A stretch of DNA of 26,024 bases, from the NCBI RefSeq assembly GCF_006345805.1, contig NW_021836004.1, positions 1 through 26,024 of the forward strand, in the 5' to 3' direction. The DNA is from Octopus sinensis. Its lineage: Eukaryota. Shown piece by piece: positions 1 to 23,380 of the stretch. Below the pieces are notes generated by a model, which saw only the letters and a program-made list of their open reading frames with translations, was not told the DNA's origin and ran no database searches. How positions within the stretch are numbered: the stretch's first letter is position 1; each line of letters starts with the position of its first letter. A program made the position numbers and the translations under genes.

Positions 1-650
1 ACATATATATATATATACACACACACACATATATATATATGTATATATACTGACATACCTGCATACTCATATACAAAAACACACATTTGCACACACACAC
101 ACACACACACACACACAATATATACATGCACAGGCATATATCTATATATATACATATACACACACACGTCTATATATACATAAGCGCATGTAAATATTTA
201 ATCAAGTGCCTCATTCACTGACCCTTGATAAATACACACACACACACACACACACTCACTCCAGCATACACACACACACAACGCAACACTTGCTGATGAG
301 AAAACAATATATACACCTGCTTAGAGGATGTAGATAACAGCTTGGGAAGAACGATTTACAAGAATGGTAGCACACACACACACACACACATATATATACA
401 CACACTCAAATATGCACACACAAACATACATGTACACAAACACACACATATATATATACACATACAAAAACACATATATATATCTATACACATTCAATAT
501 GTACACACACATATATAATGCACAAACATATATACACACAAACACACATACATGCACAAATATACACACACGCACACACACACACACAGATATACACACA
601 CATACATATACAAATACATACATAGATATACACACACACACACACACACA
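1..650. repeat. Compound (TA)n/(CA)n microsatellite field
   Basis: Interleaved TA and CA dinucleotide runs; source of the HT/CV/YI-rich spurious ORFs. Confidence 0.95.
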
Positions 651-757
651 AATGGTTCCGGGTTCAGTTCCACGGCATGGCATCTTGGGCAAGTGTCTTC
701 TACTATAACCTTGGGCCGACCAAAGCCTTGTGAGTGGATTTGGTAGACGGAAACTGA
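651..757 (+). mobile_element. 5' half of tRNA-derived CORE-type SINE (main family in window)
   Basis: B-box-like GGTTCAGTTCC and CORE-like CTTGGGCAAGTG; aligns by eye to the full copy at 8995-9410. Confidence 0.85.
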
Positions 758-807
758 ACAAGTATAGTATTAATGGATGTCTAGTATTATTGACCCCACC
801 AGAAACG

Positions 808-1169
808 GAAACAGTATGGTATCGCTTCCGTGCCCACCCTGTTGTCCATGGATACCCTGCTGTCATTGGTATCGCTTCTGTGCCCAGATTTAGCCCCTGA
901 AGACTTCCATCTCTTCCCCAAGATGAAAATGTGTCTCAAAGGTCTCTGCTTTGACACCATTGTCAAGACTGAAAACAAATTGTAGAAGGTCCTTGACACA
1001 ATGACGGAAAATTGACTTCCAGGTTGGATTCCAAAAGTGACGGGAATGCTGGGACAGGTGCAGTGCTGTGCAAGGAGACTATTTCAAAGGAGAAGATGTT
1101 AAAAATTAGGTAAATAAGTTATTTTTTAATGAGCATAATTAGTCTGGGAACTTTTTGATATCACCTCGT
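808..1169 (+). mobile_element. Degenerate Tc1/mariner transposon, 3' end with right TIR
   Basis: Translates to NSMVSLP...CPDLAPEDFHLFPKMK (YSPDLAP motif region), then after a stop and a frameshift to DFQVGFQK*RECWDRCSAVQGDYFKGED, a typical mariner C-terminus. TIR-like end reads (reverse complement) ACGAGGTGATATCAAAAAGTTCCCAGACT, followed by TA. Confidence 0.88.
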
Positions 1170-1174
1170 TAAGT

Positions 1175-1207
1175 CTGTGTGTATGTGTGTGTGTGTGTGT
1201 TTGCATG

Positions 1208-1255
<48 letters not shown>

Positions 1256-1379
1256 ATGAGGTGTGTGTGTGTGTGTGTGTTGTGTTGTGTTTGCATGAGG
1301 TGTGTGTGTGTGTTGTGTGTTGTGGTGTGTGTGTGTGTGTGTTTGCATGAGGTGTGTGTGTGTGTGTTTGCATGAGGTG

Positions 1380-1410
<31 letters not shown>

Positions 1411-1420
1411 TGTTTGCATG

Positions 1421-1458
<38 letters not shown>

Positions 1459-1670
1459 ATGAGGTGTGTGTGTGTGTGTGGTGTGTGTGTGTGTTGTGTT
1501 TGATGAGGTGTGTTGGTTGTGTGTGTGTGTGTGTGTGTGGTTTGCATGAGGTTTTGTTGTGTGGTGTGTGTGTGTTGTTGTGTGTGTGTTTGCATGAGGT
1601 GTGTGTGTGTGTGTGGTGTGTGTGTGTGTTTGCATGAGGTGTGTGTGTGTGTGTGGTGTGTGTTTGCATG

Positions 1671-1714
<44 letters not shown>

Positions 1715-1717
1715 ATG

Positions 1718-1752
<35 letters not shown>

Positions 1753-1764
1753 TGTGGTTTGCAT

Positions 1765-1804
<40 letters not shown>

Positions 1805-1835
1805 ATGAGGTGTGGTGTGTGTGTGTGTTTGCATG

Positions 1836-1877
<42 letters not shown>

Positions 1878-1927
1878 ATGGGGTGTGTGTGTGGTGTGTG
1901 TTGTGTGTGTGTGTGTGTGTTTGCATG

Positions 1928-1969
<42 letters not shown>

Positions 1970-1974
1970 ATGAG

Positions 1975-2010
<36 letters not shown>

Positions 2011-2108
2011 ATGAGGTGTGTGTGTGTGTGTGGTGTGTGTGTGTGTGTGTTTGCAATGAGGTGTGTGTGTGTGTGTTGTGTGGGTGTGTGTGTGTGTTTG
2101 CATGAGGT

Positions 2109-2144
<36 letters not shown>

Positions 2145-2300
2145 ATGAGGTGTGTGTGTGTGGTTGTGTGTGTGTGTGTGTGTGTTTGCATGAGGTGTGT
2201 GTGTGTGTGTGTGTGGTGTGGTGTGTGTGTGTTTTTGCATGAGGTGTGTGGTGTTGTGTGTGTGTGTGTGTGTGTGTGTTTGCATGAGGTGTGTGTGTTT
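1175..2300. repeat. (GT)n array punctuated by TTGCATGAG (about 26 interruptions, variable period)
   Basis: Seen directly in sequence. Confidence 0.95.
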
Positions 2301-2493
2301 GTGTTACCGTCACTGCTTGACAACCAACGTTGGTTTGTTAACATCCCCATGACTTAGCAGTCCAGCAAGAGAGACCAAGAGAATAACAATAAAAGAAACA
2401 AAAGTCCCGGGGTCGATTCGTTTGACTACAACCCCTTCGAGGTGGTGCCCCAGCATGGCCAGAGTCCAATGATTGAAACAAGTTCAAAGATAA
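2297..2493 (+). mobile_element. 3' half of main-family SINE (diverged)
   Basis: CTTGACAACC...GTCCCGGGGTCGAT...CCAGCATGGCC...GAAACAAG matches the 3' half of the 8995-9410 copy. Confidence 0.85.
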
Positions 2494-3024
2494 ATCTGTA
2501 ATTATCTGATTAATTCTTAACGATGATAACCTCGCTGAACGTCACACTTCGACGCCACCAGACACACAGACAGATTTATCAATTGCCAAACTTCGGCTTC
2601 ACTCTACGACATCGTTAAATTTTTAATTAATTGAGAATTTCCTCAGTTCTCTCCCCCTTGGTTCCCCGCAGAAACCCCAGGACAAAAACATTAAAAACCT
2701 TCGTTATCGCTAATTCGTTATTCCTTTTAATTACTGCTTCAAATTTAAAGTGATTAAACTTTTTTGTTTGTTTGTTGTTGGTTGACGAGTTTAGTCGAGC
2801 ATAGGGAGACTAATGGGGGGGGGGAATGGGGTTAGGGGTTACTGGGGGGGTCGATGGTGGTGGTGGTGGTGTGTTGGGGTTAATTTCAATGGTGGTTTGT
2901 TGTGGTTTATAGGTGTGTGTGAAGAGGGAGACGGTGGGAAGAAGAGGAAGAGAGAGAGAGAAGACATAGTGGGGTACTGTGGCTGGGTGTACCTCTAGTG
3001 GACATTTGGGGTACTGTCAGCTGA

Positions 3025-3582
3025 TACACTCACACACATACACACACACACTCAAACACTCACTCACACATACACACACTCGTATATACTCTCATGCACA
3101 CACACACACAGACACACGCATTCAGTCTCACACACACACACACACACACACTCACAGCCTCAGACACACACACACACGCTCACAGCCTCAGACACACACA
3201 AGTGCACACACACTCACAGCCTCAGACACACACACGTGCACACACACTCACAGCCTCAGACACACAAGTGCACACACACTCACAGCCTTAGACACACACA
3301 CGTGCACACACACTCACAGCCTCAGACACACACACGTGCACACACACTCACAGCCTCAGACACACACAAGTGCACACACACTCACAGCCTCAGACACACA
3401 CACACGTGCAAACACTCACAGCCTCAGACACACACACACTCACAGCCTCAGACACACACACACTCACAGCCTCAGACACACACACACATGCACACACACT
3501 CACAGCCTTACACTCAAACACATATGTGCATACACACACACACACACACACACACTCACAGTATCACACACACACACACACA
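3025..3582. repeat. CA-rich minisatellite with core CACTCACAGCCTCAGAC (about 12 copies, 3150-3510)
   Basis: Seen directly; period about 22-34 bp with GTGCAC variants. Confidence 0.92.
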
Positions 3583-3744
3583 CGTTGCTCCAGTCCACTC
3601 AGCTGGCAAAAAGGAGTAACTCTGCGATGGACTAGGGTCCCGTCCAGCTGGGGAACACATACGCCACTGAAACCGGAAACTGGGCCCATGAGCCTGGCTA
3701 GGCTTTAAAAGGGCGCATTTATTATTATTATTATTATTATTATT
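3583..3744 (+). mobile_element. 3' part of a second SINE family with (ATT)n tail
   Basis: Shares TTGCTCC.GTCCACTCAGCTG with the SINE at 19993-20165 and ends in AAAAGGGCGCAT(TTA)n. Confidence 0.7.
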
Positions 3745-3748
3745 CAAT

Positions 3749-3930
3749 ACACTCACTGGTAAAATTTCCACTCATTCCCTTATTTTTATTTTCCTAAAAT
3801 TTTCGTTGCATCTTGCAACCTTTTCAATAGTTATTGATTAGACAGCAAGTGATCAAAAAGGTTGCACGATGCAATGAAAATTTTAGGCAAAATAAAGAAG
3901 GAAATGAGTGGAAATTTTATCAGTGTGTGT
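3749..3930. repeat. Imperfect long inverted repeat (about 76-bp arms, 31-nt spacer), probable Penelope-like element remnant
   Basis: Arms 3749-3824 and 3856-3930 are reverse complements, roughly 85-90% identical by eye; contains a hammerhead-like motif. Confidence 0.85.
3794..3830 (-). ncRNA. Minimal type I hammerhead-like motif, U3-A8 core variant
   Basis: Minus strand: CUA UUGAAAA G GUUGCA-AGA-UGCAAC GAAA AUU U UAG. Stem I CUA/UAG, 6-bp stem II with G-C closure, GAAA, palindromic AAUU stem III. Confidence 0.55.
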
Positions 3931-4230
3931 GTTAAATTATAAGGCACTAAAAGAGAATGACCCTCCCCAGACACAACAGAATGTAACTTTTAATTTTTTT
4001 GTTAAAAATAAATATTGTACGTGCTTCTTTTTTCTTAATTGTATACCCTCAATTTCTGAACCCCCCTATATGTATATATATATATAAAAGCAATTAAGAT
4101 TCAAGTCAATTCTAATGAATTCACTTGAATGCGGTACTTAACTTAGATGCACCAGAAAACTATATGGTGTTAACCATACAGTAATGTGAGGTGATTATAA
4201 ACGAGAAAGAAGCAACAAGAATGGATTAGT

Positions 4231-4321
4231 TTTTAGTACAATTGTTTCATACAAAGACAGGCTTTATTAAAAGTTGCAAATATTGCAGCAGATAAAAGTG
4301 TCCCATACTCATCAGCTAAAA
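4231..4321 (-). ncRNA. Type I hammerhead ribozyme motif (mirror copy in left arm)
   Basis: Exact reverse complement of 4366-4456. Confidence 0.78.
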
Positions 4322-4365
4322 TACATATCAGCCTCACCCACTAAGATATTTGGAGAACTCATGTA

Positions 4366-4456
4366 TTTTAGCTGATGAGTATGGGACACTTTTATCTGCT
4401 GCAATATTTGCAACTTTTAATAAAGCCTGTCTTTGTATGAAACAATTGTACTAAAA
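4366..4456 (+). ncRNA. Type I hammerhead ribozyme motif with canonical core and long stem II
   Basis: UUUUAG(4366-71) CUGAUGA(4372-78) [60-nt stem II, 4379-4438] GAAA(4439-42) CAAUU GUA(4448-50) CUAAAA(4451-56). Stem I 6 bp, stem III palindrome ACAAUUGU, GUA cleavage triplet. Confidence 0.8.
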
Positions 4457-4504
4457 ACTAATCCATTCTTGTTGCTTCTTTCTCGTTTATATATATACAT
4501 ATAT

Positions 4505-4702
4505 AACGGGAAGGTTTACAAAAATAAACAAAAGACGAAGGCAGGTGGAGTACAAACAAACAAATGTATTAGTATGGCGCTCAGGAATAGAAATAGAAAA
4601 AGTGTTTTACGTTTCGAGCATACGCTCCTCGACAGAAAGATACACAGAAAAGAAACAAGGAGAGAAAAAAATGTGTGTAGGAGCTAACGATCCAACATGG
4701 CG

Positions 4703-4703
<1 letters not shown>
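4505..4703 (-). mobile_element. Short Penelope-like element fragment (family shared with 20715-20930 and, more distantly, 24000-24205)
   Basis: AAACAAAAGACGAAG.CAGG...TGTATTAGT...TTTCGAGC...AAACAAGGAGAGAAAA is shared with the 20.7-kb copy; (TA)n-flanked; carries a hammerhead-like motif. Confidence 0.65.
4604..4639 (-). ncRNA. Minimal hammerhead-like motif (GAGC/GCUC stem II family)
   Basis: Minus strand: CUUU CUGUCGA G GAGC-GUAU-GCUC GAAA CGU A AAAC; core deviates at A6. Confidence 0.55.
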
Positions 4704-4751
<48 letters not shown>

Positions 4752-5204
4752 TATACACACACACATGCATATATAAAACCCCCACACAAAACACACATAT
4801 ATAACCCCCCACACACACACATATACTGCACATACACAAACATGCGCACACTCGTCTAATATAAAAGTAATTAATTAGTCCTGTGTAACCTCGTTAACGA
4901 AAGATCAGCTTCTCTCTGTTGTTGTCCATGGAAATTAAATCTTTGGTCAATTAGCCCAAAATAACAGAGATAATTACAGAATGCACCCCCCCCCCTGCCC
5001 GCCCCCCTCTCGACACTGAACTTGTTTAAAAACTCACTTCTTCATTAAGATATAGGCTCGTTTTCATTAAGCAGCTGGTAATTAACATGGAATGAATGGA
5101 ATCTGGATGGATGGGGGTGTAGGATGAAGGGTTTATGGGGTGCTGACAGATGGGCTCAGCAGGCTGAGAAGGTTCTGACACAAAGAATATATTTTGTACC
5201 AGTT

Positions 5205-6512: not shown

Positions 6513-7023
6513 GTGTAAGTGGGTGTAGTTTTTTGTTGTGTCCATTTTCAGCTGGAAACGGAGAAACGGGGATGAAGGAGAGAGAAATCTATTAAAGTTT
6601 GGAACTTGACAAGATTTTGACAGAAAAATCCAAAGGATTTTCCTCCAAATCTGATGAGATGGAAAAGGTTGGAGTGTTTTGGATGGAATATTCAAAATGA
6701 TGGACAGAAAAATTAGTTTGTATGTGTATAGGGAGAGAGAGAGGGAGAGAGAGAGAGTGGTGTGTGTGTATGTACACAGGTTTATGAGTGTTTGTGTGTA
6801 TGTGCATGCTTTATAGTGTATATATATATATAACAAACACACACACATAACAATTTTGCCAGCATGCCGTATGGATGTTCTGATATTTTCATACATATAT
6901 ATTTGTATGTGCTTCTATGTGTGTGTGTGTTTCTCTCATTGTGTATATATATATATGTGTGAGTGTGTGTGTATGTTTCTGTGTGTGTGTGTGTATACAT
7001 ATATATTATTCTTTTCTTTTTTC

Positions 7024-7408
7024 TTTTACTTGTTTCAGTCATTTGACTGTGGCCATGCTGGAGCACCGCCTTTAGTCAAGCAAATCGACCCCAGGACTTA
7101 TTCTTTGTAAGCCCAGTACTTATTCTATTGGTCTCTTTTGTTGAACCGCTAAGTGACGGGGACATAAACACACCAGCATCGGCTGTCAAGCAATGCTAGG
7201 GAGACAAACACAGACACACAAACACAAACACACACATACATATATATATACATATACATATATATGACGGGCTTCTTCCACTCACAAGGCATTGGTCTGC
7301 CCAGGGCTATAGCAGAAGACACTTGCCCAAGGTTCCATGCAGTGGGACTGAACCCGGAACCATGTGGTTGGTTAGCAAGCTACTTACCACACATCCACTC
7401 CTACGCCT
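7024..7408 (-). mobile_element. Near full-length main-family CORE-type SINE
   Basis: Reverse complement of 8995-9410 with a small internal deletion. Confidence 0.92.
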
Positions 7409-7455
<47 letters not shown>

Positions 7456-8809: not shown

Positions 8810-8953
8810 ATGGCGTTAGGAAGGGCATCCAGCTGTAGAGACATTACCAGATCAGACTGGGCCTGGTGCAGCCTCCTGGCTTCCCTGACCCCAGTCGAAC
8901 CGTCCAACCCATGCTAGCACGGAGAGCGGATGTTAAATGATGATGATGATGAT
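8810..8953 (+). mobile_element. (GAT)n-tailed retroposon 3' end
   Basis: GGCGTTAGGAAGGGCATCCAGCTGTAG...CCAACCCATGCTAGCA...(GAT)n. Confidence 0.82.
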
Positions 8954-8994
8954 ATATACATACATACATGTGTGTATATATATATATATATAAT

Positions 8995-9410
8995 AGGCGC
9001 AAGAGTGGCTGTGTGGTAAGTAGCTTGCTTACCAACCACATGGTTCCGGGTTCAGTCCTACTGTGTGGCATTTTGGGCAAGTGTCTTCTGCTATAGCCTC
9101 GGGTCGACCAATGCCTTGTGAGTGGATTTGGTAGACGGAAACTGAAAGAAGCACGTCGTATATTTATATATATATATATATGTGTGTATGTATGTGGTTT
9201 GTTGTGTCTGTGTTTGTCCCCCTAGCATTGTTTGACAACTGATGCTGGTGTGGTTACGTCCCTGTCACTAGCGGTTCGGCAAAAGAGACCGATAGAATAA
9301 GTACTGGGCTTACAAAGAATAAGTCCCGGGGTCGATTTGCTCGACTAAAGGCGGTGCTCCAGCATGGCCGCAGTCAAATGACTGAAAACAAGTAAAAGAG
9401 TAAAAGAGAG
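8995..9410 (+). mobile_element. Full-length tRNA-derived CORE-type SINE (possibly one of the described octopus OR/OK families; not assigned)
   Basis: A-box TGGCTGTGTGG, B-box GGTTCAGTCC, CORE-like TTGGGCAAGTG, internal TA/GT microsatellite and (GTAAAAGA)n tail. Confidence 0.92.
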
Positions 9411-9463
9411 AGAGTATATATATATATGTGTGTGGGCGTGTGTGTGTGTGTTTATATATATAT

Positions 9464-9808
9464 TCTTTCACTTGTTTCAGTCATTTGACTATAGCCATGC
9501 TGGAGCACTGCCTTTAGTTGAGTAAATCAACACTAGGACTTATTCTTTCTAAGCCTAGTACTTATTCTATCAGTCTCTTTTGCCGAACCGCTATGTTACA
9601 AGGATGTAAACACACCAGTATTCATTGTCAAGCGATGGTGGGGTGACAGACATAGACACACAAACATATGTGTGTGTATATACATACATATATACATATG
9701 TATATATATATATATAAAGAAGCCTGTTGTATATATATATATATATACATATAATTAGTGAATGGAAGAAATGGAGTTGAACGAAGATTGTACAGAATTC
9801 CTTTTAAA

Positions 9809-9858
<50 letters not shown>

Positions 9859-10025
9859 TATATACAACAGGCTTCTTTCAGTTTCTGTCTACTAAATCCA
9901 CTCACAAGTCTTTGGTCAGCCCGAGGCTATAGTAGAAGACATTTGCCCAAGGTGCCACACAGTGGGACTGAACCCAGAACCATGTGGTTGGTAAGCAAGT
10001 CTCTTACCACAGCCACACTTGTGCA
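9464..10025 (-). mobile_element. Full-length main-family SINE with expanded, interrupted middle
   Basis: 3' half at 9464-9665 and 5' half at 9866-10025, both reverse complement to 8995-9410. Confidence 0.9.
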
Positions 10026-10493
10026 TATTCGAAAACAACACAGAACCAAATGAATGCTTTCTTAATTCTGTGTCTTGATTTTAATATAATTTAATTAGCA
10101 ATTTGTCATTTATATATTTTAATTACAAAATGAACTATTAATAACAAGTGTCTATGTGTGGCAGTGCAAGAGTACACCAGACTCCGGAATGTTCTAAATG
10201 GAAAAGATAACAATTTCATTTCTTAAATGCTAATTCTCCAAAGGAAATCCAATCTTAAGCTGAACAGATCTTCATCAACATCTGTCCTGAGTTATTTAAG
10301 ATATTTTTTAGATTTAGAAATGCCAAGGATTTTGCATATGCCTTTTCATTCACACTCACAGAGTTCAACTCATGTCTGCATGGGAAGTGGATGTTAAATG
10401 ATCGTATATGTAAATATATGTGGTTGTAACGAAGGCCATTGTCAGTGGTGTGTGACTGGCCTATTAAAAGCACCTTTGAATCGTTGGATGATG

Positions 10494-11180
10494 TCATCAT
10501 CATCATTGTTCGACCGTGGTCGAGACAATGGAATTTACCATGCTACGCCAGACTTCACGGTCCATCATAGCATTTCGGAGGTCCTGTTGCTGGATGCCTG
10601 TATCCCTGGAGATTACATCAGGGTAGGAGAGTGTGCACCCTCTGGTATCACGACCGTGGTTGAGACAATGGAATTTACCATGCTACGCCAGACTTCACGG
10701 TCCATCATGGCATTACGGAGGTCCTGTTGCTGGATGCCTGTATCCCTGGAGATTACATCAGGGTAAGAGAGTGTGCACCCTCTGGTATTGCGAGTAGATG
10801 GCTTCCAGAGGAGAAGAGTAGAAATTACCTCTTTTCCAGTTCTACAACAATGTCCAGCAAACTGGACTCTCTTACCTTTCACAAGAGATGACAGGTGGTA
10901 GTTTCCATATATTTGCTTTTGGTTGGATGGCGCTTCCACGAGAGATTTTGAGCTCTCATAAGGAGGCGAGTGTAAGTTCCATCCAACCGCCTCTCAAGCT
11001 TCTTTGATAACGTCCAGGTTTCTGAGCCATATAGTAGAATTGGTTCGACTGTGGCTTTGAAGATTTCAAGTTTGAAGTCTCTACTTAGATTTGATGACCA
11101 GATCTTATGCATGTCATTACAGGCTGACCAGGCCATACCCTTTCTAGTTAGAAAATCTTTTCCAGATGATGTGCTGTGCA
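10494..11180 (-). mobile_element. 5'-truncated RTE-clade LINE (C-terminal part of RT-containing ORF, frameshifted) with (TGA)n tail
   Basis: ORF 10879-11265 contains RKGMAWSAC..KIW..FKATVEPILLYGSETWTL..RRLDGTYTRLLM. The next frame (10613-10939) continues QFAGHC..DLRNAMMDREVWR. These are typical RTE post-RT motifs. Confidence 0.9.
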
Positions 11181-11182
11181 TG

Positions 11183-11692
11183 TGAAGACCTGTCGAACCG
11201 AGTGAATTCATAGTTGTGGCCGATGCCAGTGCCGTCTGACTGGCACCCATGCTGGTGGCACACAAAAAGCACCATTTGAGGTTTGAGTCTCAGGGAGGCA
11301 GTGACAGGTAACCAAAGCCCTTGGTGATGTATATTTGTGTAATCAAAGGAGGTGACTTTGTGCCAGGGGGATGGAAAGTTAGAGAATGGGTGGAGGGAAA
11401 GAAATAGGGGTCATGCTGTAGGGGAGGTACATATATGTATATATCTATGTATACACACACACACACACACACTATCAAGTCAAGTGAGGCTGTAGTCGTG
11501 GCTGATACTGGTTTCAGGCCAATGGCACCTGTGCCAGTGACACATAAAAAAAAACACCCACTACACTCTCGGAGTGGTTGGCATTAGGAAGGGCAGCCAG
11601 ATTGGAACCCGGTACAGCTCCCTGGCTTACCAGTCTTCAGTCAAACCGTCCAACCCATGCCAGCATGGAAAGCAGACGTAAATGATGATAAT
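11183..11692 (+). mobile_element. Composite (GAT)n-tailed retroposon copy or copies with inserted segment
   Basis: GAAGACCTGT...GGTGGCAC.CAAAAAGCACC and CACTACACTCTCGGAGTGGTTGG...CCAACCCATGCCAGCATGG motifs. Confidence 0.7.
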
Positions 11693-13367: not shown

Positions 13368-13620
13368 CTTTTGCTAGTTTCAGTTATTTGACTACGACCA
13401 TGCTGGAGCACCAGCTTAAACAGAGAAACCTTAAAGGGTTTGTATTTTTGAGTCAAAGAAATCGATCCCGGCAATTAATCTTTGTTAAGCTTAGTACTTA
13501 TTCTATCAGTCTCTTTTGCTGAACTGCTAGGTTGCAGGGACATAAGCAAACCAACATCGGTTGTCATGAGGCACTGGGGGGGGGGAAACAAACACAGACA
13601 CAAAGACAAACACACATATA
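13368..13620 (-). mobile_element. Main-family SINE 3' half, running into the 65-bp array
   Basis: GTTTCAGT.ATTTGACT..GACCATGCTGGAGCACC...AGTACTTATTCTATC...ACAAACACAGACAC. Confidence 0.85.
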
Positions 13621-15091
13621 TGAAGGGCTTCTTTCAGTTTCCATTTACCAAATCCACTCACAGCCCTCAGACAAACACACATATATGAAGGGCTTCTTTC
13701 AGTTTCCATTTACCAAATCCACTCACAGCCCTCAGACAAACACACATATATGAAGGGCTTCTTTCAGTTTCCATTTACCAAATCCACTCACAGCCCTCAG
13801 ACAAACACACATATATGAAGGGCATCTTTCAGTTTCCATTTACCAAATCCACTCACAGCCCTCAGACAAACACACATATATGAAGGGCTTCTTTCAGTTT
13901 CCATTTACCAATCCACTCACAGCCCTCAGACAAACCACATATATGAAGGGCTTCTTTCAGTTTCCATTTACCAAATCCACTCACAGCCCTCAGACAAACA
14001 CACATATATGAAGGGCTTCTTTTAGTTTCCATTTACCAAATCCACTCACAGTTCTCAGACAAACACACATATATGAAGGGCTTCTTTCAGTTTCCATTTA
14101 CCAAATCCACTCACAGCCCTCAGACAAACACACATATGTGTAGGGCTTCTTTCAGTTTCCATTTACCAATCCACTCACAGCCCTCAGACAAACACACATA
14201 TATGAAGGGCTTCTTCAGTTTCCATTTACCAAATCCACTCACAGCCCTCAGACAAACACACATATGTGTAGGGCTTCTTTCAGTTTCCATTTACCAAATC
14301 CATTCACAGCCCTCAGACAAACACACATATATGAAGGGCATCTTTCAGTTTCCATTTACCAAATCCACTCACAGCCCTCAGACAAACACACATATATGAA
14401 GGGCTTCTTTCAGTTTCCATTTACCAAATCCACTCACAGCCCTCAGACAAACACACATATATGAAGGGCTTCTTTCAGTTTCCATTTACCAAATCCACTC
14501 ACAGCCCTCAGACAAACACACATATATGAAGGGCTTCTTTTAGTTTCCATTTACCAAATCCACTCACAGTTCTCAGACAAACACACATATATGAAGGGCT
14601 TCTTTCAGTTTCCATTTACCAAATCCACTCACAGCCCTCAGACAAACACACATATGTGTAGGGCTTCTTTCAGTTTCCATTTACCAAATCCATTCACAGC
14701 CCTCAGACAAACACACATATATGAAGGGCTTCTTTCAGTTTCCATTTACCAAATCCACTCACAGCCCTCAGACAAACACACATATGTGTAGGGCTTCTTT
14801 CAGTTTCCATTTACCAAATCCATTCACAGCCCTCAGACAAACACACATATATGAAGGGCTTCTTTCAGTTTCCATTTACCAAATCCACCCACAGCCCTCA
14901 GACAAACACACATATATGAAGGGCTTCTTTCAGTTTCCATTTACCAAATCCATTCACAGCCCTCAGACAAACACACATATATGAAGGGCTTCTTTCAGTT
15001 TCCATTTACCAAATCCACCCACAGCCCTCAGACAAACACACATATGTGTAGGGCTTCTTTCAGTTTCCATTTACCAAATCCACCCACAGCC
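13621..15091. repeat. 65-bp SINE-derived tandem array, about 23 units
   Basis: Unit TGAAGGGCTTCTTTCAGTTTCCATTTACCAAATCCACTCACAGCCCTCAGACAAACACACATATA; units start at 13621, 13686, 13751, 13816 and so on. Confidence 0.97.
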
Positions 15092-15158
15092 TTCAGTCAA
15101 ATCGTACAGCCCATGCCAGTATGGAAAGCGGACATTAAATGACGACAACGACGATGAT
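15092..15158 (+). mobile_element. (GAT)n-tail family 3' end
   Basis: TTCAGTCAAA.CGT.CA.CCCATGCCAGTATGGAAAGCGGAC.TTAAATGACGAC...GATGAT. Confidence 0.8.
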
Positions 15159-15329: not shown

Positions 15330-15948
15330 ACACACACGACTATACACACACACACTCACGGCTATATACACACACGACTATACACACACACACTCACGGC
15401 TATATACACACACGACTATACACACACACTCACGGCTATATACACACACACTCACGGCTATATACACACACACTCACGGCTATATACACACACACTCACG
15501 GCTATATACACACACACTCACGGCTATATACACACATGACTATACACACACACACTCACGGCTATATACACACGGGACTATATACACACACACTCACGGC
15601 TATATACACACATGACTATACACACACACTCACGGCTATATACACACACACTCACGGCTATATACACACACACTCACGGCTATATACACACACACTCACG
15701 GCTATATACACACACACTCACGGCTATATACACACATGACTATACACACACACACTCACGGCTATATACACACGGGACTATATACACACACACTCACGGC
15801 TATACACACACACACTCACGGCTATATACACACGGGACTATATACACACACACTCACGGCTATATACACACACACTCACGGCTATATACACACGGGACTA
15901 TATACACACACACTCACGGCTATACACACACGGGACTATATACACACA
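15330..15948. repeat. About 20-bp minisatellite (ACACACACTCACGGCTATAT)n with GACTAT variants
   Basis: Seen directly. Confidence 0.95.
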
Positions 15949-16094
15949 ATGATATATTGGCTTGGCTATGGTCTTAGGTAAGGTTTGATGGGGTGGAGGA
16001 CTGGAGAAACTGGATTTAGGTTTGAATGCAGGTGAAAGTCTTTAAGAAAAGGAGGAAGAAAAATATCCTGTTTTAGATTTGAATATCATTGTAG

Positions 16095-16575
16095 AATGGG
16101 AAGGGAGAGGGGGAGGAAAGAGAGGTAGAATGAGAGAGTGGGGAGAAAGAGAGGAGAGAGAAAGAGAGAGAGTGGAAGAAAGAGAAAGAGGGAGAGAGAG
16201 TGTGGGAGAAAGAGAAAGAGGGAGAGAGGAAAAGAGAGGTAGAATGAGGGAGAGAGAGGGGGAGAAAGAGAGAGAGTGGAAGAGAGAGAGTGGAAGAAAG
16301 AGAGAGGAATGGAGAGTGAGAAAGAGAGGAGAAAGAAGGAAGGAGAAAGAGAGAAAGCGAGAGGAGAGGGAAAGAGAGAGGATAAAGAGGGAGAGAGGAA
16401 AAGGGAGGTAGAATGAGGGAGAGAGAGAGGGGAGAAAAAGAGAAGGAGAGAGAAATGGAGAGTGAGAAAGAGAGGAGAAAGGAGGGAGAAAGAGAGAAAG
16501 CGAGTAGAGAGGGGAAGAGAGAGAGAGAAAGAAAGAGAGGGAGAAAGAAAGAGAAGGAGAAAGAGAGAGAGAGAG
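16095..16575. repeat. Polypurine (GA-rich) degenerate satellite
   Basis: Almost pure A/G with recurring GAGGTAGAATGAG and ATGGAGAGTGAGAAA blocks. Confidence 0.9.
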
Positions 16576-16899
16576 GGTGTATGAGAGCTGAAGACTTTGG
16601 AGGAAGAAATTTTTTGTGGGTTGAAAAAAGAAGGGATTTGAATAATGATTGAAGACAAAGGAAAAACATAAAGATGATTGACGGGGCTGAAGGGGGTGGG
16701 ACGATGGGGCTTAGGGGACACTTCACAATGGATGGAATAATGGGAGGGGAAATGATGGGAGGGATTTGGTGAGGTGGAGATACTTGCTTAAGATGGGAAG
16801 GAAGAAAATGGCTGACGTAAGGAGGAGGAGGAGGGGAACAATGGAAGAGAAGAAGGGTCAAATATGAGGGGTGGTGGGCATGGACGGGTGTTACTGGGA

Positions 16900-17283
16900 A
16901 GTTTGTGTGTGTGTGTCTGTGTGTGTGTGTGTGTATATGAGTGTGTGTGTGTGTGTATGTGTGTATGAGTGTGTGAGTTTGTGTGCATGTGTGTGTGTGT
17001 ATGTATGAGTGTGTGAGTGGTTGGGTGTGTGCGAGTTTGTGTGCATGTGTGTGTGTATGAGTGGGTGAGTTTGTGTGTGTGTGTGGGTGTGTGTGTATGA
17101 GTGGTTGGGTGTGTGTGAGTGTGTGTGCCCACACATTTATGTGTGTGTGTGTGTGAGTTTGTGTATTTGTTTGTGTCTGTGTGTATGTGTGTGTGTGAGT
17201 GTGTTTGGTTGGGTGTGTTCAAATTTGTCTGTGTGCAAACTTGTGTATGTGTGTGTGTGCATATGTTGTGTGTGTGTGTGTGT
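16900..17283. repeat. GT-rich degenerate micro/minisatellite
   Basis: Seen directly. Confidence 0.9.
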
Positions 17284-17494
17284 ATTTGGAATATCTAATG
17301 AGAAGGAGACAAAAGGCCCCTTTACAAAGATTAAGGGCCACATTTAACAACAGACTCTTCACCCCTCAACTATTTCCTTACGTATTTGTTTTCTTCGTTT
17401 AAAATTCTCTGCAATTATTTTCTTAGTTAATTACCCAATCAATGGTTTTCCAGTATAATTGTTCATTCCATTCAAAGAGTCAGTGTGTGACCAC

Positions 17495-18130
17495 GTACAC
17501 ATAAACACACACACATTCACACACACACTCATATACACACACATACATACACACACATACTAATATATAAATACATACATATATATATATATACATATAT
17601 ATATGTGTATATACGTACAATCATATGCATACATACAACACTATATATATATTATGTATATATATATTACGTATATATATATATACACACACACATATAT
17701 ATATACATATATATACAATCGTATACATACATACATACAACACTACATATATATATATATATATATATTGGAATATATATATTGTGTCTGTGTATATATA
17801 TATGTATATATATACATACATGTACATACACACATACATATATATAAATTGGTGCATACGTACCTATACGTATACACACACACACATATATATATACATA
17901 CATACATGTATACATACACATACTCATCTAGATGTGCATACATGCATACACACATATACACTAAAAAATACACACATATACACACACCCAAATATACAGA
18001 CATACACACACATATACACACACAGGTATACACACACACAGACACAGATACACACAAACACACACATACATACATACACACATTCATACACACAAGTATA
18101 CACACATCCGCACCCAGATACACATGAACA
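17495..18130. repeat. Compound TA/CA microsatellite
   Basis: Seen directly. Confidence 0.9.
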
Positions 18131-18134
18131 CCCA

Positions 18135-18770
18135 CACACACACACCCTCAGATACACTCACACACCTGGATACACACACCCATACACAGGTATACACTCA
18201 CACACACACCCTCAGATACACTCACACACCTGGATACACACACCCATACACAGGTATACACTCACACACACACCCTCAGATACACTCACACACCTGGATA
18301 CACACACCCATACACAGGTATACACTCACACACACACCCTCAGATACACTCACACACCTGGATACACACACCCATACACAGGTATACACTCACACACACA
18401 CCCTCAGATACACTCACACACCTGGATACACACACCCATACACAGGTATACACTCACACACACACCCTCAGATACACTCACACACCTGGATACACACACA
18501 CCCACACACAGGTATACACACACACACAGAGCCAAACACCAACGCCCCCACACTCACACACCTGGATACACAAACACCCATACACAGGTATACACACACA
18601 CACAGCCAAACACCAACCCCCCCACCGTCACACACCTGGATACACACACACCCACACACAGGTATACACACACACACACACACACAGCCAAACACCAACC
18701 CCCCACCCTCACACACCTGGATACACACACACCCACACACAGGTATACACACACACACACACACCTGGCC
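18135..18770. repeat. 64-bp tandem array (6 copies) followed by 3 variant units
   Basis: CCCTCAGAT occurs at 18145, 18209, 18273, 18337, 18401 and 18465; later units replace it with GCCAAACACCAAC. Confidence 0.95.
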
Positions 18771-19099
18771 GTGCAAATGTCTCCCCCCCCGCACTTCAGT
18801 TACAAAATTCTTCTTAAATCTTTTCTTCAAATTCTTTTTGTTTTTTTAATTCCTCAAAGAATAAAAAATTTTTTTTAAATTCTAAAAAAACCCCCCAAAA
18901 AATCCTCAGACAAAAGCCGAAACAATAAACATTGCAACATAATGAGTAGAGAGATGGAAAGACTTGCTTAAGGTGTGAATGGAGACAATGGCTGATGTGA
19001 CAGAGTCAAGTTTAAGACAGAAACAAACAAAAAACAAAAAACAATCTGTTTGCCATTGTTTTCAAACAATTTTACTAAATTTTACAGGTTTTTTTACCA

Positions 19100-19760
19100 T
19101 TTTCTTCTTCAATCTCTCTCTCTTTCTCTCTCTCTCTTTTTCTTCTTCAATCTCTCTCTCTCTCCCCTTTGTTCTCTCTCTCACACTCTCTCTCCTTTGT
19201 TCTCTCTCTCTCTCTCTTTCTTTTTCTTCTTCAATCTCTCTCTCTCTCTCTCTCTCTTTCTTTTTCAATCTCTCTCTCTCTCTCCCCTTTGTTCCCTCTC
19301 TCTCTCTTTCTTTTTCTTGGTCTCTTTCTCTTCTTGATCCCCTTCTCTCTAATTCTCTCTATATTCTCTTCCTCTCCAGCTTTCTCCTGTTTCTTACTCT
19401 CCCTCTCTCTCTCCGTCTCTCTCTTGTGTTCTCCTTCCCTTACTCTCTCCTCTCTCTCTTTCTCTCTTGCTTTTTTCTTCTCTTACTCTCTCTCCTCTCT
19501 CTCTCTGACTTTCTCCCATGGCCCTTCCTCTTTCTCCCTTTCTCTATCTCTCTTTCTCTCTCTGTCTGCCACTCCAACTTTCTCCTCTCTCTCCCTATTC
19601 CCCCTCCCCTCTCTTTCTCCTCCACCCTTCTACCTCACTCACACCCCTTTCTCCTCCCTCTCCTCCTCTCTCACCTGCTCCCTTTCCTCTTTCCTCCCCC
19701 TCCCCCCATTCTCTCTCCTCCCTCCCTCCCCATTCCCTCCCACCCTGGTCCCTCTTCAAA
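19100..19760. repeat. Polypyrimidine (CT-rich) tract
   Basis: Almost pure C/T with repeated TTCTTCAATCTCTCTC blocks. Confidence 0.9.
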
Positions 19761-19992
19761 TTTCTTTTCTCCTCACAAAAAAATAAAAAGAAAAAAATCT
19801 TTAAACCAAAACCATTCTTTCTGTTGTCTTTCATTCTTTCTGGGGTTAGGAGTGGAGGTCAGGGAAGGAACGGTTTTCAACACTGTTTTCTACTCTGTTT
19901 TTTGTGGTTTCCTTTTTTGACTTTTTAAAAATAAATATTCGGCTTTCAAAGGTTTTCTTTGAATGCCTTCAACTATGGCCACCACCACCAGG

Positions 19993-20416: not shown

Positions 20417-20710
20417 GGAGGCGCAATGGCCCAGTAGTTAGGGCAGCGGACTCGCGGTCACAGGATCGCGGTTTCAATTCCCAGACCGGGCGTTGTGTGT
20501 GTTTATTGAGCGAAAACACCTAAAGCTCCACAAAGCTCCGGCAGGGGATGGTGGTGATCCCTGCTGTACTCTTTCTCCCACTCTTCTTCTGTCGGCCTGC
20601 TCGCTTAGCCAGCGGGGTGACGTCATTCAAAGGCTAAAACAATGCGAACGCATTGTGACCAGCGATGTGTAACTACGTCTGATGGTCTGGTCGGTCACGT
20701 GATCACGTGA
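20417..20710 (+). mobile_element. tRNA-derived SINE, third family, apparently full length
   Basis: A-box TGGCCCAGTAG, B-box GTTTCAATTCCC; ends in (TCACGTGA)2 then TA repeats. Confidence 0.8.
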
Positions 20711-20714
20711 TATA

Positions 20715-20930
20715 TGTATGTATAGTTGGAATTTACACAAAAAAAAAACAAACAAAACAAAAGACGAAGACAGGTGTGTGAACAACAAACGGATGTATTA
20801 GTTTAACGCTGCGGAAGTGAGGAAGACTTTTACATTTCGAGCCTATGCTCTTTGATAGAAAGGAACACAGAAATAAACAAGGAGAGAAAATTAAAAAATG
20901 TTTAGGGGCTAGCGAACAATCACGGCGAAT
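20715..20930 (-). mobile_element. Short Penelope-like fragment with decayed hammerhead motif (20827-20862)
   Basis: Homologous to 4505-4703; followed by (TA)n. Confidence 0.62.
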
Positions 20931-20960
20931 ATATATAGATATATATATATATATATATAT

Positions 20961-20995
<35 letters not shown>

Positions 20996-21601: not shown

Positions 21602-21721
21602 ATATATATGTAAATATATTTATAAAAATACCTGAACATTGTATATACAAACACACATATACATGCTTGAATTGAGACAATGCTCTGTGTGTGTATATAT
21701 GCATATATATATATATATACG

Positions 21722-22117
21722 CTTTTACTCTTTTACTTGTTTCAGTCATTTGACTGCGGCCATGCTGGAGCAGCGCCTTTAGTCGAGCAAATCGACCCCG
21801 GGACTTATTCTTTGTAAGCCCAGTACTTATTCTATCGGTCTCTTTTTGCCAAATCGCTAAGTGACGGGGACACACCAGCATCAGTTGTCAAGCAATGCTA
21901 GGGGGACAAACACAGACACACAAACACACATACATACACACAAATATATATATATATATACATATATATACGACAGGCTTCTTTCAGTTTCCGTCTACCA
22001 AATCTACTCACAAGGCATTGGTCGGCCTGGGGCTATAGCAGAAGACACTTGCCCACGATGCCACGTAGTGGGACAGAACCTGGAACCATGTGGTTGGTAA
22101 GCAAGCTACTTACCACA
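21722..22117 (-). mobile_element. Near full-length main-family SINE
   Basis: Close reverse complement of 8995-9410. Confidence 0.93.
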
Positions 22118-22661: not shown

Positions 22662-23079
22662 AGGCTGTGAGTGGCCGTGTGGTAAGTAGCTTGCTTACCA
22701 ACCACATGGTTCCGGGTTCAGTCCCACTGTGTGGAACCTTGGACAAGTGTCTTCTACTATAGCTTCAGGCTGACTAAAGCCTTGTGAGTGGATTTGGTAA
22801 AAGAAAACTGAAAGAAGCCTGCTGTGTATATGTATATATATATATATATGCGTGTGTGTGTGTGTATGTGAGTCTGTGTTTGTCCTCCCAACATCACTTG
22901 ACAACCGATGCTGGTGTGTTTACGCCCTTGTAACTTAGCGGTTCGGCAAAAGAGACTGATAGAATAAGTACTAGGCTTACAAAGAATAAGTCCTGGGGTC
23001 GATTTACTCGACTAAAGGCCATGCTCCAGCATGGCCACAGTCACATGACTGAAACAAGTAAAAGAGTAAAGAGTAAGAG
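22662..23079 (+). mobile_element. Full-length main-family SINE
   Basis: A/B boxes, CORE-like block, internal microsatellite and GTAAAAGA tail. Confidence 0.92.
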
Positions 23080-23110
<31 letters not shown>

Positions 23111-23150
23111 GTTTATACTTTATTTAAAGCAGCAGAAAATTCAACAAAAC

Positions 23151-23188
23151 CTGTTACTCTGAGTTTCTCGTTCCTGTTCATCAGACAG
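23151..23188 (-). ncRNA. Type I hammerhead-like motif (left-arm copy, canonical core, disrupted stem II)
   Basis: Minus strand: CUGU CUGAUGA ACAGGAACGA GAAA CUCAGA GUA ACAG. Confidence 0.58.
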
Positions 23189-23199
23189 TTTTTGCTAAA

Positions 23200-23237
23200 C
23201 TGTCCGATGAACGGCAACGAGAAACTCAGAGTAACAG
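23200..23237 (+). ncRNA. Type I hammerhead-like motif (right-arm copy, U4C core)
   Basis: CUGU CCGAUGA A-CG-GCAA-CG-A GAAA CUCAGA GUA ACAG. Stem I CUGU/ACAG, stem III ACUC-A-GAGU, GUA triplet. Confidence 0.65.
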
Positions 23238-23380
23238 ATTTTGTTGAATTTTCTGCTGCTTTAAATAAAGCATATTACTCTACCACTGGTATTTGAGTAC
23301 TCTTTCTTTCCACCTTGTTTCACATTTATGTGTTTACTCCGGCATATATATATGTATGTATATATATATATATATATACA

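What the first reader, a model, noticed from the sequence alone, without database searches (positions are those of the whole stretch)
4196..4491. Perfect 131-bp palindrome encoding two canonical-core hammerheads with an unusually long stem II
The arms are identical with a 34-nt spacer. The plus-strand motif (4366-4456) has stem I UUUUAG/CUAAAA and an exact CUGAUGA and GAAA. Its 60-nt stem II (GUAUGGGACA/UGUCUUUGUAU, wobble-rich, G-U closure) contains a nested UGCAA-UAU-UUGCA hairpin. Stem III is the palindrome ACAAUUGU, and predicted cleavage is after GUA at 4450. The mirror copy is on the minus strand (4321->4231). Palindromic stem III matches dimer-cleaving hammerheads reported for Penelope-like elements (Cervera and De la Pena 2014; Lunse et al. 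2017). Arm identity implies a young insertion or arm homogenisation.
Basis: partly seen in the sequence, partly recalled or inferred. Interest (0 to 1): 0.85.

Follow-up and report, generated by a model that had tools for sequence, protein, structure and literature searches.

The report
Inverted pair of hammerhead retroelement fragments
Two identical short pieces of a mobile genetic element, each carrying a hammerhead self-cleaving RNA motif, sit head-to-head in an animal genome in the arrangement typical of Penelope-like retrotransposon insertions; the motif is real, but it is a known kind of thing and this copy is probably a poor or inactive ribozyme.

Summary
Arms 4196-4326 and 4361-4491 are 131 nt and 100% complementary, with a 34-nt unique centre. 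Each arm carries, reading outward, a type-I hammerhead with exact CUGAUGA and GAAA, a 6-bp helix I, a 60-nt helix II and the palindrome ACAAUUGU as helix III.

The motif is not chance: about 0.003 loose hits are expected per shuffled window, and about 0.002 per 3-Gb genome at the observed quality. Support for an active ribozyme is weak:
- No Rfam hammerhead model matches, even at E<=10.
- The hammerhead fold is about 8-9 kcal/mol worse than the MFE.
- Helix II is no more structured than shuffles.
- The 10.1-11.1 pair is G-U, not the conserved G-C.
- The two copies lie on opposite strands, so they can never share one RNA and dimerise in cis.

The geometry is head-to-head, with a 34-nt length difference, an AT-rich TATA/(TA)n target and strong 5' truncation. 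This matches published Penelope-like element (PLE) insertion architecture. My best reading (0.58) is a young, dead-on-arrival double insertion of a PLE or PLE-dependent 3' end.

No other copy was found in any accessible collection, so conservation and covariation remain untested. It is a new member of a known kind, of modest interest.

The parts
4196..4326 (-). Left arm: a 5'-truncated copy of the element, with the sense strand on the minus strand reading outward (leftward). It carries the mirror hammerhead motif at 4321->4231, with the predicted cleavage site between 4237 and 4236.
   Evidence: exact reverse complement of the right arm; descriptor hit on the minus strand.
4327..4360 (.). A 34-nt unique, non-palindromic centre. 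I infer it is the extra 5' extension of the longer of the two copies (165 versus 131 nt). Which arm it belongs to cannot be decided without other copies.
   Evidence: no self-complementarity. The size difference parallels the inverted pLTR that is 37 bp shorter than the direct one in PMC3846280. This is inference.
4361..4491 (+). Right arm: a 5'-truncated copy of the element, with the sense strand on the plus strand reading outward (rightward).
4366..4456 (+). Type-I hammerhead motif: helix I 4366-4371/4451-4456 (6 bp), CUGAUGA 4372-4378, helix II region 4379-4438, GAAA 4439-4442, helix III palindrome ACAAUUGU 4442-4449, A17 4450. Predicted scission is between 4450 and 4451.
   Evidence: Chance estimate.
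4379..4438 (+). The 60-nt helix II region. The closing stem is 4379-4388 / 4428-4438 (10 pairs, 5 of them G-U, with bulged C4431), followed by CUUU/AAAG and the distal hairpin 4400-4412. It contains AAUAAA at 4419-4424.
   Evidence: constrained fold; MFE -7.9, z=-0.19; AATAAA.
4196..4199 (.). TATA at the left outer end. It is self-complementary and is a candidate target-site duplication or (TA)n target remnant.
   Evidence: PLE preference for (TA)n and AT-rich targets: PMC8557442 and PMC11167929.
4488..4505 (.). TATA at the right outer end, running into the TA-rich tract TATATACATATATA. This is the inferred AT-rich target site.

Best explanation
The locus is a short, dead-on-arrival insertion of the 3'-terminal non-coding part (pLTR or 3'UTR type) of a Penelope-like retroelement, or of a non-autonomous element mobilised by one. 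It is present as two 5'-truncated copies joined head-to-head.

Inferred mechanism:
1. The element's endonuclease cut an AT-rich TATA/(TA)n site.
2. cDNA synthesis on the element RNA was primed at both sides of the break, or by self-priming or template switching.
3. Each cDNA stopped after about 131 and about 165 nt, and the two 5'-truncated ends were joined in the middle.

This gives perfectly identical arms, 3' ends facing outward, and a 34-nt unique centre that is simply the extra length of the longer copy.

Each copy carries the family's type-I hammerhead. In a donor element arranged in tandem, two sense copies on one RNA would pair their ACAAUUGU segments into an 8-bp helix III and cleave after GUA. 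At this locus the two motifs are on opposite strands, the monomer fold is weak, and any read-through transcript would form a 131-bp hairpin. Self-cleavage here is therefore unlikely, and the ribozyme is best seen as a passenger relic of the donor family.

What is shown: the motif, its non-chance status, the geometry, the AT-rich flanks and the weak folding.

What is inferred: the donor family, the priming mechanism and the youth of the insertion.
For: 1. The hammerhead core and helices are present and not chance.
2. A palindromic helix III, a large helix II and a short open helix I are the published traits of PLE and metazoan type-I hammerheads (PMC4209133; PMC6765202).
3. The sense strands read outward on both arms, which is head-to-head.
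[quoted passage not shown] Hammerheads lie near the 3' ends.
   - PMC3846280: head-to-head is the most frequently observed inverted arrangement. The typical structure there has an inverted pLTR 37 bp shorter than the direct one, compared with the 34-nt difference here.
4. PMC4209133 reports pairs of min-HHRs 100-700 bp apart on opposite strands, with most motifs dispersed as truncated-PLE relics.
5. The target is AT-rich: TATA at both ends and TATATACATATATA on the right.
   - PLEs show microsatellite and (TA)n insertion bias (PMC8557442).
6. The sequence continues 37-41 nt beyond the predicted cleavage site. This fits uncleaved RNA as the insertion template, as found for PAc.
7. Zero differences in 131 nt contrasts with 78-91% identity among the other dispersed repeats of the window, as expected for two cDNAs made in one event.
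Against: - No PLE reverse transcriptase or GIY-YIG ORF was seen in the window. ORFs >=100 aa show only a LINE tail, and a full six-frame domain scan could not be run.
- No second copy of the element was found anywhere, so homology to any PLE pLTR is untested: the window, related-host contigs, JGI metagenomes, GTDB genomes and IMG/VR, and a six-frame peptide search of 5.8 billion proteins.
- The 30-40-bp 'tail' typical of one outer end of PLE insertions is not evident, because the outer ends are symmetric.
- No unambiguous target-site duplication exists, because TATA is self-complementary.
- The window holds other unrelated hairpin-like inverted repeats (3737-3942; 23114-23274, which also abuts (TA)n). 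This raises the prior for a generic palindromic MITE.
Confidence: 0.58

Rival explanations
1. A palindromic MITE or foldback DNA transposon: about 127-nt terminal inverted repeats, a 34-nt loop and a TA or TATA target-site duplication, mobilised by a Tc1/mariner-like transposase. Its arms happen to derive from, or have captured, a hammerhead-bearing retroelement fragment.
For: - Perfect long inverted repeats bounded by TA/TATA in a TA-rich site.
- The window contains other short hairpin elements, one of which (23114-23274, 78-nt arms, 94%) also abuts (TA)n and ends in TA.
- No PLE ORF is nearby.
- Sub-threshold Rfam hits to MITE-like plant miRNA hairpins show only that it is a long hairpin.
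Against: - A hammerhead of this quality inside an unrelated inverted repeat is expected about 0.002 times per 3-Gb genome, so the arms must descend from a hammerhead-bearing element anyway.
- The outward sense orientation, with the motif near the outer (3') ends, is what PLE head-to-head copies give.
- No second copy exists in the window.
- The termini (AACGAG...) do not resemble the other hairpins.
Confidence: 0.18
2. A single hammerhead-bearing retroelement fragment (PLE relic, retrozyme monomer or SINE-like element) inserted once. It was later duplicated in inverted orientation by a DNA-level event such as a replication template switch or fold-back repair, or its arms are kept identical by intra-palindrome gene conversion.
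For: - The arms are perfectly identical although the surrounding repeats are old.
- The centre is unique, as in template-switch products.
- The hammerhead lineage is established.
Against: - This requires an extra event, whereas PLE integration itself routinely yields this structure.
- Both outer ends stop at the same element nucleotide next to TA-rich DNA. That is natural for two 3'-anchored cDNAs but not for a random duplication breakpoint.
Confidence: 0.12
3. A functional hairpin-RNA or miRNA-like locus: the palindrome is transcribed through and diced into small RNAs, and the hammerhead resemblance is irrelevant.
For: - The whole locus folds into a perfect 131-bp hairpin of -219.5 kcal/mol.
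- Several miRNA-precursor models give sub-threshold hits, for example MIR1435 at 80 bits against a gathering score of 94.
Against: - All those hits are below gathering and are to plant families. They reflect hairpin shape only.
- There is no conservation evidence.
- It does not explain the complete hammerhead core.
- Small-RNA production would be a by-product of any inverted transposable-element pair.
Confidence: 0.04
4. An assembly or read artefact (fold-back chimeric read), so the palindrome does not exist in the genome.
For: - Perfect arm identity.
- PMC8557442 notes that PLE tandem/inverted structures cause assembly problems.
- Independent reads could not be checked.
Against: - The mirrored segment is only 131 nt and is bounded on both sides by unrelated unique sequence (3900-4195 versus 4492-4800). 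A fold-back read would mirror everything distal to the turn.
- The centre is not an adapter-like hairpin.
Confidence: 0.04
5. A chance hammerhead look-alike in an unrelated palindrome.
For: - No Rfam hit.
- Weak fold.
- AT-rich helix I and G-U-rich helix II.
Against: - Expected 0.0033 loose hits per window and none of this quality in 300 shuffles.
- About 0.002 per 3-Gb genome analytically.
- It coincides with a geometry typical of hammerhead-bearing elements.
Confidence: 0.04

Closest known systems
Hammerhead motifs in the pseudo-LTRs of Penelope-like elements (min-HHR and small palindromic-helix-III variants; Cervera and De la Pena 2014, PMC4209133)
   Same: - Type-I topology with an open, short helix I.
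- An exact catalytic core.
- A larger-than-canonical helix II.
- A palindromic helix III that can only form a stable helix in a dimer.
- Occurrence as dispersed truncated relics and as pairs on opposite strands 100-700 bp apart.
- No loop-loop tertiary contacts.
   Different: - Helix II is 60 nt instead of a 6-8-bp hairpin.
- G10.1-U11.1 replaces the conserved G10.1-C11.1.
[quoted passage not shown]
- No link to a PLE ORF could be shown.
- Cleavage is untested.
PLE insertion architecture: direct and inverted pLTRs, with head-to-head inverted 5'-truncated copies (Arkhipova et al. 2013, PMC3846280; Craig et al. 2021, PMC8557442)
   Same: - Head-to-head orientation.
- Strong 5' truncation.
- An arm-length difference of a few tens of nt (34 here, 37 in Pen2a_Av).
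- An AT-rich or (TA)n target.
- The hammerhead lies near the outer 3' end.
   Different: - Only two short fragments are present, with no ORF or direct pLTR between or beside them.
- There is no recognisable 30-40-bp tail at one outer end.
- There is no palindrome at the inverted junction itself.
- The target-site duplication is ambiguous.
Metazoan non-LTR retrozymes (Cervera and De la Pena 2020, PMC7229834; Li et al. 2026 preprint, 10.64898/2026.07.22.740005)
   Same: - Short non-coding units with type-I hammerheads and a weak, palindromic helix III.
- Now argued to be non-autonomous derivatives of PLE pLTRs.
- The unit size here (>=165 nt) is near the published 170-400-nt range.
   Different: - Retrozymes are tandem direct repeats that give circular RNAs. 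Here there is no tandem array, only one inverted pair.
Naiad/Chlamys PLE 3'UTRs with 'HHR_half_core' (PMC8557442)
   Same: - The core halves are separated by an unusually long distance (35-50 nt there, 60 nt here).
- (TA)n target preference.
- Complex tandem/inverted insertions.
   Different: - Those elements do not fit the stem/loop descriptors. This motif has all three helices and a full core. No sequence comparison was possible, because the supplements are not held.
L1 twin priming (from my own knowledge, not checked here)
   Same: - Two cDNAs are primed at one target break, giving inverted 5'-truncated copies.
   Different: - L1 twin priming gives an inversion within one element with poly(A). 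It does not give a symmetric head-to-head pair of identical 3' ends.

Membership tests
Hammerhead ribozyme, type I | Conserved core: C3 U4 G5 A6 N7 G8 A9, G12 A13 A14, A15.1-U16.1, and H17 not G | tested here: met
   CUGAUGA at 4372-4378, GAAA at 4439-4442, A15.1(4442)-U16.1(4449), A17 at 4450.
Hammerhead ribozyme, type I | Three helices radiating from the core, with helix I open-ended | tested here: met
   Contiguous pairs: helix I 6; helix II 7 plus 3 after a bulge; helix III 2 as a monomer or 8 as a dimer. No such motif of this quality in 300 shuffles.
Hammerhead ribozyme, type I | The hammerhead fold is the MFE or a well-populated structure of the RNA | tested here: not met
   Constrained fold -3.9 to -4.9 against MFE -12.8 kcal/mol. 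Helix I and II pair probabilities <=0.11. CUGAUGA is mostly paired.
Hammerhead ribozyme, type I | G10.1-C11.1 closing pair of helix II | tested here: not met
   G4379-U4438 wobble. The pair is listed as highly conserved in PMC4209133.
Hammerhead ribozyme, type I | Match to a curated covariance model (Rfam hammerhead families) at gathering score | tested here: not met
   No hit at gathering on the whole window. No hammerhead hit at E<=10 on 4150-4540. The 60-nt helix II and 2-bp helix III are the likely cause.
Hammerhead ribozyme, type I | Core conservation and compensatory changes among homologues | not testable with these tools
   No homologue found. The two arms are identical and carry no information.
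Hammerhead ribozyme, type I | Site-specific self-cleavage 3' of H17 | not testable with these tools
   Requires transcription and cleavage assays.
PLE-associated dimeric hammerhead | Short helix III with palindromic 15.2-16.2 / loop 3, able to form an extended helix III in a dimer | tested here: met
   ACAAUUGU is a perfect 8-nt palindrome. Duplex energy -8.4 kcal/mol.
PLE-associated dimeric hammerhead | [quoted passage not shown] | tested here: not met
   The best register pairs G4379 directly. Allowing the extra nucleotide gives no helix II.
PLE-associated dimeric hammerhead | A second sense copy on the same RNA (tandem arrangement) for dimer formation | tested here: not met
   The only other copy is on the opposite strand. 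There is no tandem copy in the window.
Penelope-like element insertion | RT plus GIY-YIG ORF, or demonstrable homology of the repeat to a PLE pLTR | tested here: inconclusive
   ORFs >=100 aa show only a LINE RT tail. No PLE reference sequences are available.
Penelope-like element insertion | 5'-truncated copies in direct and/or inverted (mostly head-to-head) arrangement | tested here: met
   Two copies with 5' ends at the centre and 3' ends outward, 131 and 165 nt. Definition from PMC8557442 and PMC3846280.
Penelope-like element insertion | AT-rich or microsatellite target | tested here: met
   TATA at both ends and TATATACATATATA on the right flank. Literature.
Penelope-like element insertion | Optional 30-40-bp tail at one outer end | tested here: not met
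   The outer ends are symmetric to the last base. The feature is optional, so this has little weight.
MITE / foldback DNA transposon | Family of copies with the same two termini and a fixed-length target-site duplication | tested here: inconclusive
   TA/TATA at both ends is compatible. There is no second copy in the window or any collection searched.
Non-LTR retrozyme | Tandem direct repeats of about 170-400 bp, each with a type-I hammerhead | tested here: not met
   No tandem repeat at or near the locus.
miRNA / hairpin-RNA precursor | Match to a curated family at gathering score, or conservation of the hairpin | tested here: not met
   All miRNA hits are below gathering, and there are none at gathering.

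The most novel reading that the evidence does not exclude
The arms represent a currently active, undescribed family of PLE-dependent elements. Its hammerhead carries a genuine 60-nt helix II domain containing a polyadenylation-type AAUAAA, tolerates a G10.1-U11.1 closure, and still cleaves as a trans or tandem dimer. That would be a new structural subclass of natural hammerhead, possibly coupling cleavage with 3'-end formation. The perfect arm identity would mark very recent retrotransposition in this genome.
Probability: 0.1. Interest if true: 0.55.

Novelty: new member of a known kind. Interest (0 to 1): 0.3.

Why it matters
As it stands, this is one more example of the very abundant hammerhead relics that Penelope-like elements and their non-autonomous derivatives leave in animal genomes.

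It has some value as a compact illustration. It shows both 3'-anchored, 5'-truncated copies of a head-to-head insertion with their junction intact and unmutated. Such a junction could inform the still unsettled PLE integration mechanism (dual-strand priming versus self-priming).

If the family turned out to be active, and the long helix II turned out to be conserved and compatible with cleavage, it would widen the known structural range of natural hammerheads. It would also explain why covariance-model scans miss such copies.

Tried and rejected
1. Rfam. Gathering on the whole window and E<=10 on 4150-4540 gave no hammerhead hit. Only sub-threshold miRNA, snoRNA and sRNA hairpin matches appeared, which I reject as shape-only.
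2. Free folding of the monomer, of helix II alone, and of the dimer cofold. None yields the hammerhead fold.
3. Other copies in the window by blastn with word size 7: none.
4. Related host DNA.
   - Homologues of the window's LINE tail led to five ENA long-read contigs, L001-L005.
   - They hold no arm copy and share only the LINE at about 72% nucleotide identity, so the host is a distant relative.
   - An exact look-up of the window's own ORF found nothing.
5. JGI metagenome scan with CTGATGAGTN{40,70}TGAAACAATTGTAC. It returned three identical contigs, L006-L008, without helix I/II complementarity and unrelated to the arm. These are chance hits.
6. IMG/VR and GTDB scans with the gapped pattern and two exact 22-mers: none.
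7. Six-frame peptide query of spacer plus arm against 5.8 billion proteins: no hit at E<=10.
8. Empty-site paralogue. The right-flank repeat 4518-4755 matches 20748-20982 at about 79%, but it starts 27 nt outside the palindrome and does not span the insertion point.
9. Relatedness of the HHR arm to the second palindrome at 23114-23274. The local alignment is 25 nt with p about 0.01-0.05. I reject it as marginal.
10. Supplementary sequence files of PMC4209133 and PMC8557442 are not held. Lunse et al. (PMC5785218) is not held.
12. Host identification by SINE sequence in the literature: no hit. ARAGORN finds no tRNA. My impression that the tRNA-derived SINE and the microsatellite load look cephalopod-like is recollection only and is unverified.

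Full report
**1. Observation**

The window is eukaryote-like, with no tRNA or Rfam genes at gathering. It consists of:
- long CA, TA and CT microsatellites;
- a 65-bp satellite;
- SINE-like dispersed repeats;
- a LINE reverse-transcriptase tail.

At 4196-4491 there is an inverted repeat with 131-nt arms (4196-4326, 4361-4491). The arms are 100% complementary around a 34-nt centre that is not self-complementary.

- UUUUAG, 4366-4371
- CUGAUGA, 4372-4378
- a 60-nt helix II region, 4379-4438
- GAAA, 4439-4442
- ACAAUUGU, 4442-4449
- A17 at 4450
- CUAAAA, 4451-4456

Helix II closes with GUAUGGG-ACA / UGU-(C)-UUUGUAU. That is ten pairs, five of them G-U (including G10.1-U11.1), with one bulged C. 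The distal hairpin UGCAA-UAU-UUGCA is at 4400-4412. The mirror motif is on the minus strand of the left arm (4321->4231).

**2. Is it chance?**

No.
- A type-I descriptor finds only this motif and its mirror in the window. The descriptor requires helix I >=5, CUGANGA, helix II >=4 contiguous pairs, GAAA, A15.1-U16.1 with >=2 bp, and H17 not G.
- 300 dinucleotide-preserving shuffles give 0.0033 hits per window, and none with helix I >=6 and helix II >=7.
- A much looser descriptor adds only low-complexity matches with degenerate cores.
- With the window's composition, a motif of the observed quality is expected 1.7e-8 times per window and about 0.002 times per 3-Gb genome. The figure is about once per 3 Gb if any helix III of >=2 bp is allowed.

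**3. Is it a good ribozyme?**

The evidence says probably not, at least for this copy at this locus.
- No Rfam hammerhead family matches at gathering or at E<=10 on the local 391 nt. The only hits are sub-threshold matches of long-hairpin miRNA models.
- The free MFE of the 100-nt and 91-nt monomers is not the hammerhead, and z = -0.30 against shuffles.
- The hammerhead-constrained fold is -3.9 to -4.9 kcal/mol. The MFE is -12.8 kcal/mol and pairs the CUGAUGA box with the 5' half of helix II.
- Ensemble pair probabilities are 0.05-0.11 for helix I, <=0.076 for helix II and about 0.01 for helix III.
- The 60-nt helix II region is no more structured than shuffles (z = -0.19).
- The closing pair is G-U, where PMC4209133 lists G10.1-C11.1 as highly conserved. 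[quoted passage not shown]
However, the locus's two motifs are on opposite strands and can never be on the same RNA.
- A read-through transcript would form a perfect 131-bp hairpin of -219.5 kcal/mol.
- Published PLE hammerheads cleave poorly even as dimers (PMC4209133). For the one PLE reconstituted in vitro, cleavage was not needed for insertion (PMC11167929).

**4. What the palindrome is**

The sense strands of both motifs read outward. The two copies therefore meet 5'-to-5' in the centre and have their 3' ends at the outer edges, both ending ...CTCGTTTATA.

This is the head-to-head arrangement described for Penelope-like elements:
[quoted passage not shown] Hammerheads lie in the pLTRs near the 3' ends, and insertion is biased to microsatellites such as (TA)n.
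- PMC3846280: head-to-head is 'the most frequently observed' inverted arrangement. In the typical structure the inverted pLTR is 37 bp shorter than the direct one.
- PMC4209133: pairs of min-HHRs occur 100-700 bp apart on opposite strands, and most motifs are dispersed singles from truncated PLEs.

Here the arms end in TATA. This is self-complementary, so it is either a 2-4-bp target duplication or part of the target. The right flank continues as TATATACATATATA.

On this basis, the 34-nt 'spacer' is most simply the extra 5' length of the longer of two cDNAs (165 versus 131 nt). It is not a designed loop.

The 0/131 differences bound arm divergence at under about 2.3%. Other dispersed repeats in the window are 78-91% identical. 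That fits two cDNAs made in one recent event, although gene conversion between the arms cannot be excluded.

**5. Limits**

I could not find any other copy of the element. Searches that failed:
- the window itself;
- five contigs from a distantly related host;
- JGI metagenomes, which gave three identical chance hits;
- IMG/VR and GTDB genomes;
- a six-frame peptide search of 5.8 billion proteins.

No PLE ORF is evident in the window, but a full domain scan was not possible. The host species is unidentified.

The window also holds unrelated hairpin-like inverted repeats: 3737-3942, and 23114-23274 next to (TA)n. This keeps a palindromic-MITE origin alive as a rival. Even then, the arms must derive from a hammerhead-bearing element.

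A fold-back read artefact is unlikely, because the mirrored part is short and is bounded on both sides by unrelated unique sequence.

**6. Comparison and novelty**

- It works like a PLE-type or metazoan type-I hammerhead with palindromic helix III. This rests on inference from anatomy.
- Membership in the hammerhead class is supported by the core and the helix topology. It is not supported by the covariance models, the fold stability or the G10.1-C11.1 pair. Cleavage and covariation are untested.
- The insertion geometry meets the PLE definition for head-to-head truncated copies and an AT-rich target. The ORF or pLTR link is unproven.
- It is not a retrozyme array, because there are no tandem repeats.
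- The long helix II recalls the 'HHR_half_core' cases with 35-50-nt spacing noted in Naiad PLEs (PMC8557442), but no sequence comparison was possible.

Verdict: a real hammerhead-lineage relic in a PLE-style head-to-head double insertion. It is a new member of a known kind, and the modest oddities (60-nt helix II with an internal AAUAAA, and a G-U closure) are more likely signs of decay or a copy-specific insert than of a new ribozyme subclass.

- Confidence in the best explanation: 0.58
- Interest: 0.3

Noticed in passing
window 23114-23274: A second near-perfect palindrome: 78-nt arms, 94% complementary, 5-nt centre. It lies immediately after a (TA)n tract and ends in TA on both sides. It has no hammerhead core. 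Its similarity to the 4196-4491 arm is marginal (25 nt, p about 0.01-0.05). It looks like a palindromic MITE.
   Followed up: partly
window 3737-3942: An imperfect hairpin-like inverted repeat (66-nt arms at 79%; inner 41-nt arms at 88%), 250 bp upstream of the palindrome and preceded by (TTA)8. It is single-copy in the window and absent from the fetched loci.
   Followed up: partly
window 13604-15101: A tandem satellite with a period of about 65 bp, about 23 copies at about 96% identity.
   Followed up: no
window 6979-7452, 8952-9429, 21690-22117, 22669-23109 (plus fragments 9461-9716, 9824-10029): A dispersed repeat family of about 430 bp at 83-91% identity, in both orientations. It includes an inverted pair forming 119-nt arms at 89% (9269-9387 / 9475-9593). 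SINE-like; not classified.
   Followed up: partly
window about 20418-20720: A tRNA-derived SINE-like sequence (GGCGCAATGGCCCAGTAGTTAGGGCAGCGGACTCGCGGTC...GGTTTCAATTCCCAGACCGGGCG). ARAGORN calls no tRNA. From memory it resembles cephalopod SINE heads, but this is unverified, and a literature string search found nothing.
   Followed up: partly
window 4518-4755 and 20748-20982: A repeat unit of about 190 bp (79% identity between the two copies), each followed by a (TA)n tract. The first copy starts 27 nt to the right of the hammerhead palindrome.
   Followed up: partly
window 10398-11265 (minus strand ORFs 10613-10939, 10879-11265): A C-terminal remnant of a LINE reverse transcriptase (weak DUF6451 hit; 246 homologues, mostly on ENA metagenome contigs, best 88-92% amino-acid identity). 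It contains an internal 138-bp tandem duplication (10511-10648 / 10651-10788, 97%).
   Followed up: partly
window 4419-4424 (and mirror 4263-4268 on the minus strand): A canonical AAUAAA hexamer lies in the 3' strand of the long helix II, about 26 nt upstream of the predicted hammerhead cleavage site. Its significance is unknown.
   Followed up: no
window 1-3600 and 15600-19900: Very long compound microsatellite or low-complexity blocks (CA/TG, CT/AG and 24-36-nt CA-rich periods) with abrupt GC-skew sign changes. Together with the other repeats, they leave little unique sequence in the window.
   Followed up: no
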